Below, piece after piece: positions 32,211-51,105 of a DNA stretch of 64,000 bases. The notes under the pieces were generated by a model. The model was not told the DNA's origin, did no database searches, and saw nothing but the letters and a program-made list of their open reading frames with translations. The position numbers and the translations under genes are program-made. Position 1 is the stretch's first letter. Every line of letters begins with the position of its first letter. The DNA comes from Bugula neritina (Eukaryota > Animalia > Bryozoa): the NCBI GenBank assembly GCA_964035545.1, contig OZ037770.1, forward strand, positions 12,452,642 to 12,516,641, in the 5' to 3' direction.

Positions 32211-35200
32211 CTAATTGATGTAAAACTTAAAGGTTCCTGTCAGAGGCGCCCCGCAGTTGAAGTAAGGACACTTAGACTTGTAGTGCTTGTTGACGTTAGT
32301 CCTCGTCTTTTCCTCCTTGCTGCATCTGTCACAGTAAATCACATGACCACACGGCAAGCCAATCTGGGTCGCCTGCAACAAAGGTCAAGTACAGTTGAGA
32401 GTACAGACAGACACACAGACAGACACACACAGACAGACACACAGACAGACAGACACAGACAGACACACAGACAGACAGACACACAGACATTCACACACAG
32501 ACAGACACACAGACAGACACAAGACAACTAGCCACACACATTCACAGAAGAACATAATATTATATAAAGAGTATAACATTGTATTATCTAGTAACACAGT
32601 ACACAAGAGAAGACAACTATAAAGAGAGTCTACTTACCGTTTCTACAATATTAGCCTTTCTGAAACACATTATACAGCTAGCAGGTGGACACTTCCTGTT
32701 GGATGTAGCATCTAGTAGTCCTGAGTATGCTCCATCAGTCTCTGAAGTATCAACAGAAGAGTAGATATACTGTGTTTAAAAGAGAGGTCAAAGGTGAATA
32801 TTGACTGGTAATGAGAATTTAGGCTATGGTAAGTCTCATGTAAATACCACCTTTGAACCACCATCTGGACTCTTTATAGGTGACAAGTTACACAGGAATA
32901 AAAACATTTAAAAGCTTAAATATTTTGGCTGAGGCTAATAGATGGTCAAACAGACTTATACATCTTTCAATTGAAATTTGAGAAGTGACGAAAGTTATTA
33001 CTGCAATTACTTCTAAATACTTATTGCTGGTCAACACTTAACTGCAGTGTTTTAAGACAGCCAGTTTGATAGAAGGATATGAGATTGGAGAGAGAGAAAA
33101 GTTAATATTTTCTAAACTTCTCAAAGTGTGAATACAAATGCTAAAAGAACTCCTGACACACTTTATTTATGCAGTAATAAAATATTTATATATATCTTAT
33201 ATAGCATCTACAAAATGCATGATGTTGTATGTTCAAACAATTTATACGAATATATATTAGCATAATATATATTATTGGCATCAACATACTAATAATAAAT
33301 ATTATTTACAAAATGGTTGAGGGTTGTACGCTCAGTCATGTTTGTTATGTAATCAATTCTGTGTTCATGCTGATTATGTTATGTTTTTCCAAATATTTAC
33401 TCCAAGTCGGAACTTAATTAAAGTTGACAGCAGTGCTCCTACGAAAAAGTTGCAGCAATTTTAATAAATTATAATTACAACCAGTCTAGTATGCTGAAAC
33501 TTTTCCGACAATATCCTGAAACTATAAGAACTGGAGAGAACAAATTTTATAATTTTACATTGACAAAACTCTAAATTAGCTTAAACTGTCATAGCATTAT
33601 GATGTTGATATTGTTGCCATGGCAACAGAAAAATATGTTTCAAGTTTTGATGAGACACTGGAGAGAAAGAACTAAATATCTATTAGTTGTAAAAACTGTG
33701 AAGAAGCAAACTACGGTATGCACATATTCACAGGCTTTGCCTGCCTAAAATATGTTACAGGGTAAAATAACCATAACTATAAAGATGCGTTTTTTTAAAA
33801 AAATTCAATTTGCAGGAGTTGAAAACTTCATGGAGTTGCAGTGCATTGCAATAGTCACTCGTCAAAACTTTTGACTGGTGATTTTTTAAACATGGGTTTC
33901 AGAAAAATCGACCAAAGGGAATGATAACTCCTTGTAGATATAATTGCATTTTCAAAGGACATCAAATAGTGAGTCATATTTACTAATAGAAAGCGAGCTT
34001 CTGCATAAATATGACTTCACAGAGTTTCGGTAAGACTGTAAAGGGATACGCTGACGAGTGTTATTAGCTAAAACTTGGTACTTTTTTTCAGAAAAAATTA
34101 CAAACACAACTTGGTTACAAGCTCAAGTACATTGGGCCATTTGAATTGGGACTGCAGCTATACAAAACAGAGGACTAAAACTGTAGTCCTGAGAGAATTC
34201 ATACCAGGAGAACTAATTCAATATAAAAGCCAAATGCTTACAGCTAATCTACCTGAAATAAAAGCCAAATGTGTAAGTATATACTTGTACATACCTTGAA
34301 ATCAAAACATTTAGTATTTACTTACATATATCTCAACAAAAAGATTTTGTCTAAAACAGATGAGTAATTATGTAACACAGATGAATAGGCATGTGCATGT
34401 AGGATTTCTAAACCCAATTAGCTTGGATAGGCTTGATGAAGTATACAATGACATATACACCTAGTATAAAGGAGAGAGTAATAGAAATGAGTAAGTATAC
34501 AGTAACAAATATACACCTAGTTTAAAAGAGTAAGTGCACACTTACGCATCTCTCCACTGCGATATCTTCTTGCATCTTCTTCAGGCACAGAGACAGGCTG
34601 GTTGGTTAATTTACCCGCTGCACCAGCTGGCATGACAGAATAGTCCATGGAGTCATCTCCCTACAGCAGACATAGTAGTAGGTTTATTATCTGTCTTACA
34701 GGGAGAGCTTACAGATATCTAGTAGATATTATATTAGTATGTAATATAACACAACTGTACTGTAATATAACACAACTGTACTGTAATATAACACAGTTGT
34801 ACTGTAATATAACACAACTGTACTGTAATATAACACAGTTGTCTTCTCTTCACATCACTGGAGGTGACATACTTCTTGGAAACCCGAATCAGGCTCGTCC
34901 AGGTTGTAAATAGCATCTAGAAAAGCTTCAGGCTCAGAAAATCTCCTGCCATTCCTTCTAACAGCTTCTTTTATTACAGTCTCACTGTGTCCCATCTTAA
35001 TGCAGAACTCAACCATGGCTAAGAGATTAAATACATACCCGTAACAACTCAGCATGTCGGTTAAGGTACTGAGGCCGTGAATGTAATAATGAAAAATACA
35101 TTTTAGTTTAATATTAAAACCAAAACAAAAACTAACGCACCATTATGGTCTTTTCTTCTTAATAACAGTTAATGTACAATTTATCTGTTATTAAATTGAA

Positions 35201-48200: not shown

Positions 48201-51105
48201 ACAAAGCTTGAAGTTTGAAGTGCTATTTCATATAACATTTAGGTTTTTCTTCTAATTTAAAAAATACTGGCACCAGCATGTTGCAGAAAACATTACGACA
48301 TTGAAATGCTTAATAACCACCTCCTTGGGAACAGAAATCTTCAGCATCTAAAACACAGTCACCTAAAACACAAAAATAAACGTAGTATAATCATGCAAAG
48401 TTTATTTTGAACAATTAAAATCAAAACTTTTGGCAATATTTGAATTCTGAAAAAAAAGAATATAGTGTTAGGCCATGCTTATAATAGAAGTATTTTACAT
48501 AAAAAATCAACTCAACTTTCAGTAAAGAATAAGTGAAAGTAACAGTAAATAGAATTTAGTTCTTTTAAATAAATTTGAGATTATAGTAGATTTAAAAATG
48601 AAAAATGTTATTGTAGGTAAATATAAATTTACAACAGCTAGAGTTTACCATACAAGTTATGTTTCCTTTACAACCGTCAAATTGGATTCAAGAATTAATT
48701 TACCAAATCTTTGACTTAGCTTTCGTAATTGATATCTAATAAACATATTTAACAAAAAACATTGGAGAAAAGCCGAGCGAATATGTAAGCAAAATGAAGA
48801 AATAGAAATTGATAACACCGTTTTTTAAATTAGTGTATTTTAATAACAATCCATAAATTTACGTTTAACCCATCCTTCATCTGCAAATAGTGGAGGAAAG
48901 TGGAACATATGGTTAATCTGCTCATTCTCTGCTTCTTTTCTGTCCAGTAGTCCTAAAACAAAAACAACTTTCATGCTTTTCTGTTATAAGTAAACGGTAG
49001 CAAGCAGTTTAGACTTATATTGGGGCTTGCTCATTTGATGGGGACTTCTGCTGTAGGTTGTTTAAGAAATATTAAACATCAATTACCTTTAGCCAAAGCA
49101 GGTGGCATTCCAACACTAATCCGGGGCTGTTTCTCACCATTCGTCATTAGGCATGATTTTGGCTCTAAAACGATCAATTGTGTGCGCACTCAGTTTTATA
49201 AAAACATTGAATAAAATCAAAAACTTGAAACAAGTAAAGTTACAAGATAGTTAGTAAATTGGGTAGTATTTTTTTACAAATATATATCAAGTTGTAAGCA
49301 AGTGCATTAAAAATTGACAGAAAAGTTTTTATATTATTTAACAGTTAATTAACACTTTTCATTAGTAAAACCGTGGCATATTGCATTTAAATGAGTTTTA
49401 AAATAGCGCAAGAATATATATATATATATATATATATATATATATATATATATATATATATATATATATATATATATATATATATATATATATATATATA
49501 TATATATATACATGTTTTTCATTGGTTTTCCACAGTGTTCCCAGTCCATTACAGAGTAAAAAAATGCATTCTTACATTTATAAAATAAAGCAGCATTCAT
49601 TTAAGTCTACCACAACACCAGCAATTTTTGTCAATATAGAAAAATGCCATTTTAAACAAAATGGTTGTTTCTATCAGCAGCTGGGACACATTTAACTTCA
49701 GAGTTCCAAGAACCCAACTATTTTTATGAACAAAAAAAGAATTTGCACACCAGATAAAAATGCTTACCATCATTAGACTGGGTGCTTAACAAGTCAGAGG
49801 GCTCAGTCTAAAAAAAATATGGACTAAAGGCTGAATGACTAATATTATCATGAAAGAAATACTAAAAAGTGATTATGTTAGAAATATCAGAGCATTTGAA
49901 CCTGATGTTATCGTTGGTTCTAACTTGTAACAAAGCATTACTAAATAATGACTAATTAGTAACATTAAAACAACCAAACAATAAAATTTCTCAGGTTTTC
50001 TTAAAATAAATTGTTTTGATTAAATGAGAGGTTTCAACTGAAGTCGCAAAATAAGCAATAGAGACATGTATATAAAATGAGTAAAAGAAGATTATCTGCT
50101 ATGTAACAGCAAATCATGTTTTTTAAGTGACAAATGACTGTGAGAACCAGCTTCAACTGTTTTAGAGACTTGCTAAGAATAAAGATAATAACGCAACCTT
50201 ATTTGGTTCCTGGCGATCTGTAATCAGTTTGATGTGCTTGAGTTGTCGGGGCAGTTCCCCTGCTGCTTTGCTGGTATTGTCATCAGACAGGGCAGCATTT
50301 GCATCATATTTATTTCTGGTGTTGACGATGCTAGTCTGAGAATACTCCAAGTAATAAACTGAAAACAAATGAGCTGGAAAACTTTACATAACGTGGTCCA
50401 TATAATGATTAGCTAAACACACACAAAACAACTACACAGCAAAACCTATAGATCTTGTCAAGTTTGAGCTTTGCAAGCAATTTATTATAAAAATATAATG
50501 TAGTATACATAAAACTGTTATATAACCTTTTATATAATAACAACAAATTACATCCTACTCTATAATAAATCAGTTATATCATAATTCAAACTGTTTGGTC
50601 TCCATTGCTTATTGTGTTGTAAATGATAGAGATCAACAGAAATAATAAACAACATCAGAAATAAATGTCTGTCCTAATAAAAAAATGATCAAATGTCCTT
50701 TGCAAAGCAAGAAAGTTTGTAATTCCAGTGTGCTAAATACAGTCTGACTAATACCATCAGTTTGAAGTCAGAAGAATATATGCAATAATAGAAGCATAGT
50801 AACAAGCAATAAAGGTGGCTTACAGCCATTCATTGTTAACTTTGTTTTTAAATCGTCAGGTAAAATGTTATAAAATTCTTCATAAACTCAATAGTTAATA
50901 GACGAACCATTTCCTCTGCCTTCAGCAACAAGACCATCTTCATGGTGCAAAACTTTGAAATCCTCTTTTTTACTCGCCTCAACCCTTTTAGTTACACAAT
51001 TAGTAATTTCACTCATTTCATCATCACCACCACCACCATCATCAGGGTAGGCAATTCTAGACCTGCCTTTTGTGTACATAGTAGCTTTTATTTCATTTAG
51101 ATATC
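42290..51105 (-). CDS. Upstream coding exons (low-complexity N-terminus, TM1, sequon-rich loop, TM2, acidic linker); probably the 5' part of the IAP gene
   Basis: Exons 51105-50908, 50358-50198, 49807-49768, 49164-49087, 48952-48863, 48362-48321, 48051-47899, 47738-47578, 47351-47255, 47141-46980, 46854-46693, 46567-46406, 46150-46106, 45860-45832, 45529-45436, 44948-44724, 44263-44156, 43890-43799, 43079-42905, 42562-42290. All AG/GT-bounded, open and phase-matched. First Met at 51079; true 5' end unresolved; small exons uncertain. Confidence 0.62.
46350..47212. repeat. 3 x 287-bp tandem repeat, each unit holding a complete 162-nt exon
   Basis: Units start at 46350, 46637 and 46924; I see one substitution (46726, Pro>Ser). 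Confidence 0.95.

What the first reader, a model, noticed from the sequence alone, without database searches (positions are those of the whole stretch)
32211..51105. Candidate membrane-spanning IAP: two TM helices and a glycosylated loop fused to BIR-BIR-UBA-RING
Seen: 34 AG/GT-bounded exons chain without a stop from 51105 to 32211 (about 1,420 aa from Met 51079). Exon 47351-47255 encodes RKK-VINIAALLMMSAIISISVSG (basic then hydrophobic). Exon 43079-42905 encodes LLPLSIAIFVTYLFSTALLVFVISSAY-RNHCR (hydrophobic then basic). Between them lie sequons NFS (x3), NFT, NGT, NCS and NIT. Established: canonical IAPs (XIAP, cIAP, DIAP) are soluble ubiquitin ligases recruited to receptors through adaptors. 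Inference: positive-inside topology gives N-in / loop-out / C-in, placing the BIRs and RING in the cytosol, i.e. a receptor-like or organelle-anchored IAP. Weak points: the 42905>42562 and 42290>40575 junctions, and an NLS-like ARKRKSK in the putative loop.
Basis: partly seen in the sequence, partly recalled or inferred. Interest (0 to 1): 0.88.

Follow-up and report, generated by a model that had tools for sequence, protein, structure and literature searches.

The report
Membrane-anchored apoptosis-inhibitor gene in bryozoans
A moss animal (Bugula) splices a membrane-spanning, receptor-like front half onto an inhibitor-of-apoptosis (IAP) ubiquitin ligase, a class known only as soluble proteins, and several related bryozoan genes are built the same way.

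Summary
Confirmed, with corrections. The 34-exon chain is open as described. The genome is Bugula neritina or very near it. RNA contigs from a close relative join exons 45529 to BIR1 (39152) at similar depth; the DNA run shows none of these joints. One contig carries the TM2 exon spliced to the next exon. RNA moves two acceptors (42562 to 42508; 39461 to 39437), giving about 1,396 aa, and reveals a cassette exon (41821-41760) that is decayed in this assembly. All four exonic indels against the relative keep frame. Not shown: RNA for TM1 and the 5' exons; the direct 42290>40575 joint; any localisation. The sequons do not indicate topology. The front half is single-copy with no known homologue. 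Intronless relatives in Bugula, Watersipora and other bryozoans carry a TM-like helix, often behind a signal-like segment, in the same reading frame as their BIRs (11/20 versus 2/18 other IAPs), although AT-rich DNA gives such helices as often. Three large IAP surveys mention no membrane IAP and no bryozoan. The scan noted this layout once before in this genome (s1-456963, unchecked). Verdict: new variant of the RING-IAP family, probably membrane-integral; receptor role inferred.

The parts
50908..51105 (-). First coding exon, Met at 51079; has an upstream acceptor, so the first (UTR) exon lies further 5', beyond a retrotransposon
   Evidence: no RNA test
47578..50358 (-). Exons 2-8: about 240 aa acidic, low-complexity N-terminal tail, predicted cytosolic; single copy where tested (exon 8)
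   Evidence: no RNA test
47255..47351 (-). TM1 / signal-anchor exon (helix 47321-47265, aa 310-328), five K/R before it, none after
   Evidence: no RNA test
46406..47141 (-). Three tandem copies of a 162-nt phase 1-1 exon (47141-46980, 46854-46693, 46567-46406), source of NFS x3, inside a 287-nt repeat
   Evidence: no RNA test
43799..46150 (-). Loop exons 46150-46106, 45860-45832, 45529-45436, 44948-44724, 44263-44156, 43890-43799: predicted luminal/extracellular domain and stalk, including the basic ARKRKSK at 43843-43823; no known homologue
   Evidence: RNA joints 44724>44263 and 44156>43890, loose end 45436>44948
42905..43079 (-). TM2 exon (helix from 42989, aa 722-740+), acidic before, RNHCR after; single copy; kept hydrophobic and in frame in the relative despite an 18-nt deletion
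42290..42508 (-). Cytosolic acidic linker exon, corrected acceptor 42508
   Evidence: one RNA contig carries TM2 exon plus this exon
41760..41821 (-). Cassette exon used by about half of the relative's transcripts (69 nt, in frame there); here 62 nt, with an in-frame stop and a non-GT donor, so presumably skipped
40978..41365 (.). MITE-like dispersed repeat in the intron at the apparent seam between the TM half and the IAP half
   Evidence: (40+ genomic copies), depth
39952..40575 (-). Linker exons 40575-40481, 40216-40189, 40050-39952; first exons with counterparts in a neighbouring IAP paralog
   Evidence: RNA joints
39664..39831 (-). Subfamily-specific lead-in exon (YP.N.NPLLPL.LQ..L motif) shared by all bryozoan relatives found
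38949..39437 (-). BIR1 (exons 39437-39264, 39152-38949); CCHC ligands intact; Ser where IBM-binding BIRs have Trp
37495..38627 (-). Linker and BIR2 (exons 38627-38460, 38375-38273, 37582-37495); most like ML-IAP / cIAP1 BIR3 type
34873..35508 (-). Linker exon 35508-35439 and UBA-like exon 35018-34873
   Evidence: weak; no PDB hit
32211..34660 (-). Linker 34660-34546 and C-terminal C3HC4 RING (32741-32638, 32372-32211), eight ligands present, ends FYIN-stop

Best explanation
One gene encodes an integral membrane IAP of about 1,400 aa (about 1,290 if the triplicated exon is used once). TM1, preceded by RKK, acts as a signal anchor (possibly cleaved) and sends a roughly 390-aa domain into the secretory lumen or outside the cell; TM2 stops transfer and leaves a flexible linker, BIR1, BIR2, a UBA-like domain and the RING in the cytosol. 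Shown: exon chain, spliced link from loop through TM2 to BIR1 in a close relative, intact zinc ligands. Inferred: topology, from charge and hydrophobicity. Inferred from cIAP/DIAP2 biology (own knowledge): the protein works as a receptor with its ubiquitin ligase built in. Clustering through the outer domain would dimerise the RING; BIR2 would hold IBM-bearing partners such as cleaved caspases or an Imd/RIPK-like adaptor; these would be ubiquitinated at the membrane without the TRAF adaptors that bring soluble cIAPs to TNF receptors. It is the intron-rich, most elaborate member of a bryozoan IAP subfamily whose conserved BIR-BIR-UBA-RING tail carries varied, fast-changing membrane-anchored front ends.
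For: RNA-only joints at even depth from 45529 to 39152; minor alternative path assigned to another paralog; four of four exonic indels against the relative in frame (18, 12, 42, 12 nt) while listed intronic ones are 1-4 nt; TM2 stays hydrophobic in the relative. Intronless genomic ORFs with TM and BIRs in one frame: W. subatra XP_067929674.1 (signal-like segment, TM with KD 2.98, then RIRAKK), B. neritina IAP1 KAF6029130.1 and its copy in this genome, and unannotated bryozoan contigs. TM-like members fall in at least six subclades of the quick tree; 11/20 versus 2/18 in other IAPs with long N-termini, 0/20 in the cores. The TM helix is the only confident part of a single-sequence model of P0162.
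Against: RNA is from a relative (about 95% identical), consists of short contigs, and none spans TM2 to BIR1; the direct 42290>40575 joint that this assembly needs was not among the joints displayed. No RNA for TM1 or exons 1-14. TM1 is marginal (dG about +0.8). No ligand-binding fold was recognised. Translated AT-rich non-coding DNA passes the same TM-like threshold 55% of the time at 150 aa, so weak helices in relatives may be incidental; rows are not independent and the threshold was set after seeing the data. The intron-rich Watersipora counterparts are annotated without a clear TM.
Confidence: 0.55

Rival explanations
1. Membrane-tethered housekeeping IAP: the TM segments only anchor a constitutively active IAP ligase to ER, Golgi or endosome (as MARCH or RNF43-type ligases are anchored); the loop is a spacer or substrate-docking domain, not a ligand sensor.
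For: Same splicing and topology evidence; loop has no recognisable receptor fold; several relatives have only 30-70 aa outside the membrane; one Watersipora relative (P0008) starts with MGxxxS, a myristoylation-like alternative anchor (by eye).
Against: Several relatives have 230-270 aa signal-flanked ectodomains; near-identical cores carry unrelated front ends (P0151/P0167 versus P0166; P0162/P0165 versus P0169), as variable receptors do; one loop exon end differs at 6 of 27 bases from the relative, all changing amino acids (read by eye).
Confidence: 0.25
2. Young or loosely constrained chimera: a distal copy from the adjacent tandem IAP cluster landed behind an orphan membrane-protein gene and is spliced into it; the fused product may have no selected function, and the extensions of the retrocopies may be de novo, hydrophobic because the DNA is AT-rich.
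For: Front half single-copy and orphan; homology with cluster paralogs begins only at about 40685, beside a MITE; loop and linker exons diverge as fast as introns (3-5%), 8 of 12 listed codon changes there are non-synonymous; cassette exon has decayed in this assembly; AT-rich null.
Against: Fusion is the major transcript path, not trace read-through; all exonic indels keep frame; BIR and RING ligands intact; TM-IAP layout recurs in other bryozoans, including a cluster nested in the same Ca-ATPase gene in Bugula and Watersipora. A chimeric origin and a selected function are not exclusive.
Confidence: 0.13
3. In this genotype the TM half and the IAP are functionally separate: splicing to the out-of-frame acceptor 42593, or inclusion of the decayed cassette exon, ends the membrane protein early, and the IAP is made from another start.
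For: Acceptor 42593 has a branch-point-like element and gives a stop 15 codons later; every way of including 41821 here gives a premature stop; no RNA from this genotype.
Against: 42508 outscores 42593 and matches the relative's joint; plain skipping 42290>40575 is in frame with strong sites (donor 8.1, acceptor 8.8); no read-through depth after 42905 or 42290.
Confidence: 0.07

Closest known systems
RING-IAPs of DIAP1-like architecture (BIR-BIR-[UBA]-RING), including the lophotrochozoan DIAP1-like group of PMC13159474; cIAP1/2, XIAP, DIAP2, ML-IAP
   Same: Two CCHC BIRs, UBA-like helical domain, C-terminal C3HC4 RING with an aromatic residue near the end; expansion by tandem duplication and intronless copies, as in bivalves (PMC7831173, PMC8917759).
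   Different: About 970 aa in front of BIR1 with two hydrophobic helices; a subfamily-specific lead-in motif; a longer loop between RING ligands 6 and 7. None of the three surveys contains the words transmembrane, membrane or signal peptide, and the two checked for it never mention bryozoans. PMC13159474 lists only single-sequence GPCR and SRCR fusions, flagged as possible artefacts.
Transmembrane RING E3 ligases (PA-TM-RING such as RNF43/ZNRF3/GRAIL; MARCH; plant ATL) - from own knowledge
   Same: Ecto/luminal domain, TM helix and cytosolic RING: ubiquitination at a membrane.
   Different: These have no BIRs and RING-H2 or RING-CH fingers next to the membrane; here the RING is IAP-type, C-terminal and about 590 aa from TM2; no PA domain detected.
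TNFR-TRAF-cIAP and PGRP-LC-Imd-DIAP2 signalling complexes - from own knowledge
   Same: A receptor outside, an IAP ligase inside.
   Different: There the IAP is a separate soluble protein recruited by adaptors; here both would be one chain. No TNFR or PGRP domain detected.
Bryozoan intronless TM-IAPs (W. subatra XP_067929674.1, XP_067930248.1, XP_067929112.1; B. neritina KAF6029130.1)
   Same: Same lead-in + BIR-BIR-UBA-RING core (about 55-80% identity per exon), hydrophobic helix upstream, usually basic residues after it.
   Different: Database entries named only BIRC7-like or IAP1, membrane anchor unremarked; short, mutually unrelated front ends; no significant similarity to the window gene's loop.

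Membership tests
IAP / BIRC family | At least one BIR with CX2CX16HX6C zinc ligands | tested here: met
   Two BIRs, Pfam PF00653 E 2.6e-11 and 2.4e-15; exact spacing found twice
RING-IAP (DIAP1-like) | C-terminal C3HC4 RING | tested here: met
   PF13920 E 5e-5 on the last exon alone (below gathering score, domain split over two exons); eight ligands present
RING-IAP (DIAP1-like) | UBA between last BIR and RING | tested here: inconclusive
   UBA_N4BP1 E 0.15; no PDB hit; aligns to the same position in other IAPs
RING-IAP (DIAP1-like) | IBM-binding groove in the last BIR | tested here: inconclusive
   BIR2 exon best single-domain matches are ML-IAP and cIAP1 BIR3; groove residues look kept by eye against remembered numbering; binding not tested
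Canonical IAPs | Soluble, no TM helix | tested here: not met
   TM2 exon spliced in frame ahead of the BIRs; it is therefore filed as a variant
IAP / BIRC family | Caspase binding or E3 ligase activity | not testable with these tools
   needs assay
PA-TM-RING / MARCH ligases | PA domain or RING-CH/RING-H2 close to the membrane | tested here: not met
   No Pfam hit in the loop exons tested; RING is C3HC4 and distal
TNFR superfamily / death receptors | Cysteine-rich domains outside, death domain or TRAF motif inside | tested here: not met
   Loop has 2% Cys; no TNFR or death-domain hit in exons tested one by one, which limits sensitivity
Integral membrane protein, N-in/loop-out/C-in | Two membrane-inserting helices with positive-inside bias | tested here: inconclusive
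   TM2 clear (dG about -1.7, 3 basic after, 3 acidic before); TM1 marginal (+0.8, 5 basic before); DeepTMHMM/Phobius not available; TM1 not RNA-linked
Cell-surface receptor | Surface location and ligand-dependent signalling | not testable with these tools
   needs bench work

The most novel reading that the evidence does not exclude
Bryozoans have a family of variable cell-surface receptors whose intracellular signalling tail is a complete IAP ubiquitin ligase, with swappable, fast-evolving ectodomains: recognition is coupled directly to ubiquitin signalling or caspase control without adaptors, possibly in immunity, symbiont handling or colony/zooid turnover.
Probability: 0.3. Interest if true: 0.92.

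Novelty: new variant of a known kind. Interest (0 to 1): 0.78.

Why it matters
IAPs are treated as soluble ligases whose recruitment to receptors is the regulated step. A survey of 2,843 animal IAPs found 121 architectures, concluded that adding new domains is not a main driver, and did not discuss membrane anchors or bryozoans (PMC13159474). A spliced, abundantly transcribed TM-IAP, plus intronless relatives in at least two bryozoan genera, shows a route by which receptor and ligase can be fused. It gives a direct test of whether membrane clustering alone switches on an IAP RING, and candidate recognition or death-control genes in a colonial, symbiont-bearing phylum with almost no molecular immunology. 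Short intronless members such as XP_067929674.1 (591 aa) are easy to express.

Tried and rejected
Per the operators' note, the spliced model was never sent to a search or folding tool; all searches were exon by exon, by reference, and the joined translation was made only inside local scripts to check frame, length and hydropathy. Dead ends: loop and linker exons found nothing in Pfam, the protein database, the Atlas or metagenome contigs; ectodomains of P0166 and P0153 found nothing. Apparent motif matches of exon 44948 to P0033 and P0008 were not significant (E 0.08-0.09). A resemblance of the TM2 exon to the Watersipora TM (QEELL / QENLL) was not significant. A death-domain look of exon 40050 had no Pfam support. 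No full-length (up to 1,456 aa) annotated orthologue was found. The careful tree did not finish; the quick tree is poorly resolved at its base and cannot count origins. Sequons as topology evidence: rejected. The 30-nt stretch 35068-35039 as an exon: rejected (phase does not fit; relatives align without it). The single read-laying run could not cover TM1.
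Full report
Observation. The two quoted segments are the most hydrophobic 19-mers of the chain (KD 2.38 and 2.16; next 1.31), with five K/R before TM1 and none after, and three acidic residues before TM2 and three basic after (insertion energies use Hessa-scale values recalled from memory and are approximate). Pfam finds both BIRs and the RING exon by exon; the UBA is weak. 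The 5' exons look real: strong acceptors under a matrix trained on the 3' half, and only the chain's frame open in 13 of 16.

Organism. The genome is 216 Mb. The nearest named proteins are from Bugula neritina and Watersipora subatra, and one intronless ORF of this genome is about 96% identical in its N-terminal extension to B. neritina IAP1 KAF6029130.1. It is B. neritina or a member of that species complex (inference).

RNA. Two RNA-Seq runs of one sample from a relative about 95% identical, and one DNA run matching the assembly, were laid on 39200-45199 (the RNA label is the tool's guess, but the contigs skip introns). RNA-only joints: 44724>44263, 44156>43890, 42905>exon 42290, 42290>41821, 40481>40216, 40189>40050, 39952>39831, 39664>39437. 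Loose ends match 45436>44948, 41760>40575 and 39264>39152 (read by eye). One 430-nt contig holds the TM2 exon and the next exon at depth 1,163; joints further down run at 606-1,172. Depth is zero in the introns after 42905 and 42290. A minor path (depth 167) has the micro-exon of a different paralog found on a Bugula metagenome contig.

Corrections from RNA. The BIR1 lead exon begins at 39437. The model becomes 1,396 aa. A cassette exon at 41821-41760 is used by about half of the relative's transcripts, in frame there; in this assembly it is 7 nt shorter, holds a stop and lacks a GT donor, so in-frame product here depends on skipping it. All four exonic indels against the relative are multiples of three (18 nt inside TM2, which stays hydrophobic; 12; 42; 12), whereas the listed intronic ones are 1-4 nt. 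Point changes in the TM2 and linker exons are as frequent as in introns and mostly non-synonymous (8 of 12 listed): frame is kept, sequence is not.

What did not hold. The three NFS sequons come from one exon triplicated in a 99%-identical repeat. Sequons are no denser in the loop than in the predicted cytosolic N-tail. ARKRKSK lies in a stalk-like exon and could be a dibasic cleavage site (inference, untested).

Genomic setting. Exons 8, TM1, 44948, TM2 and 42508 are single-copy. Five intron-rich IAP copies lie within 80 kb upstream; similarity to them starts at about 40685 for one and at the lead-in exon for the rest. The seam between the TM half and the IAP half is the long intron holding a MITE and the cassette exon. 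This fits either fusion of an IAP duplicate to an orphan membrane gene or loss of the front half in the duplicates; the direction was not resolved.

Relatives. A search with the BIR1 exon and a follow-up gave a distinct subfamily marked by a lead-in motif. Many members have long N-terminal extensions (26 of 38, against 18 of 125 other IAP hits). Intronless genomic ORFs carry hydrophobic helices in frame with the BIRs: W. subatra XP_067929674.1 (signal-like segment, short ectodomain, TM of KD 2.98, RIRAKK) and its paralogs, B. neritina IAP1, and several unannotated contigs. The intronless cluster sits in an intron of a PMCA-type Ca-ATPase gene in both genera. Eleven of 20 non-redundant extensions pass a TM-like threshold, against 2 of 18 in other IAPs (Fisher p 0.006, rows not independent, threshold chosen afterwards) and 0 of 20 cores; but translated AT-rich DNA passes it 55% of the time at 150 aa. 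The weak helices are therefore not evidence on their own; the strong, conserved, charge-flanked ones (five with dG of 1 or less, and this gene's TM2) are. Stop-free stretches of 100-200 codons are improbable in such DNA (6e-4 to 4e-7), so the extensions are probably coding. TM-bearing members occur in at least six subclades and their front ends are unrelated between subclades, even where cores are nearly identical. The intron-rich Watersipora counterparts share exon boundaries but show no clear TM in their annotation. Isolated IAP-like proteins elsewhere (Haliotis XP_046344485.2, one unnamed Logan protein) also have a hydrophobic stretch before their BIRs, so the idea may not be confined to bryozoans; this was not followed up.

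Mechanism. Most likely an integral membrane IAP: TM1 as signal anchor, loop luminal or extracellular, TM2 as stop-transfer, BIR-BIR-UBA-RING cytosolic. Membrane insertion by TM2 with the IAP inside: about 0.8. TM1 in the same protein: about 0.65. Whether the loop senses a ligand (receptor with built-in ligase, activated by clustering and RING dimerisation, BIR2 holding IBM-bearing substrates) or only tethers the ligase to an organelle is not settled; ectodomain size, turnover and swapping tilt towards the first. These last steps rest on knowledge of cIAP and DIAP2, not on tests here.

Comparison and novelty. It meets the IAP and RING-IAP tests and fails the 'soluble' expectation; it is not a PA-TM-RING, MARCH or TNFR-family member, though it would work like the first or like a fused TNFR-cIAP complex. 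Surveys of 2,843 metazoan IAPs (PMC13159474), oyster IAPs (PMC8917759) and clam IAPs (PMC7831173) never mention membranes or signal peptides, and keyword searches found no description; the library lacks most subscription papers. An unchecked first-stage note from another piece of this genome describes the same layout. Rated a new variant of a known kind, interest 0.78.

Noticed in passing
window 41821-41760 (-): Cassette exon included in about half of the relative's transcripts but decayed in this assembly (7 nt shorter, stop, TT donor).
   Followed up: yes
window 46350-47212: 287-nt tandem triplication (99% identical) containing a symmetric 162-nt exon: very recent exon multiplication in the loop, or an assembly artefact.
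   Followed up: partly
window 51435-53954 (-): Long (839 aa) reverse-transcriptase ORF of RTE/LINE type, in what is probably the gene's first intron or upstream region.
   Followed up: no
window about 58270-62630: GC-rich LTR-retroelement-like insertion with long direct repeats at both ends and broken ORFs.
   Followed up: no
window 1-29000: Tandem family of small genes with a Cys-rich PAN/apple-like exon and an F-type-lectin-like exon, on both strands.
   Followed up: no
window 40978-41365: About 390-nt MITE-like repeat with 40+ genomic copies.
   Followed up: partly
G000:C6:12518000-12595000 (L042-L049): Cluster of five further intron-rich IAP copies; two lack RING or UBA exons and lie head to tail, which could read as tandem partial genes or as one multi-BIR gene.
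   Followed up: partly
L053 (B. neritina), L059 (W. subatra), G000:C5:6.76-6.85 Mb: Intronless IAP cluster nested antisense in an intron of a PMCA-type Ca-ATPase gene in both genera (shown for L053 and L059; inferred for C5).
   Followed up: partly
P0151/P0167 vs P0166/P0163; P0162/P0165 vs P0155/P0169: Nearly identical BIR cores carrying unrelated membrane-anchored N-termini, suggesting front-end swapping.
   Followed up: partly
P0008 (W. subatra XP_067951499.1): Starts MGGHAS, a myristoylation-like motif: possible alternative membrane anchor in the intron-rich branch.
   Followed up: no
L062, L064: Intron-rich relative in another bryozoan metagenome with a 300-400 aa glutamine-rich exon fused to the lead-in motif; contigs end before any TM could be seen.
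   Followed up: partly
L061:1970-2230: A Bugula paralog has six or more 40-nt tandem copies of the start of the second BIR1 exon; similar stubs occur in Watersipora (L074).
   Followed up: no
P0040 (Haliotis), P0138 (Logan), P0054 (Ca. Endonucleobacter): Non-bryozoan IAP-like proteins with a hydrophobic segment or signal-like peptide ahead of the BIRs.
   Followed up: no
window 45436-45462 (-): End of a loop exon differs from the relative at 6 of 27 bases, five codons all changing amino acid, against about 4-5% background.
   Followed up: partly
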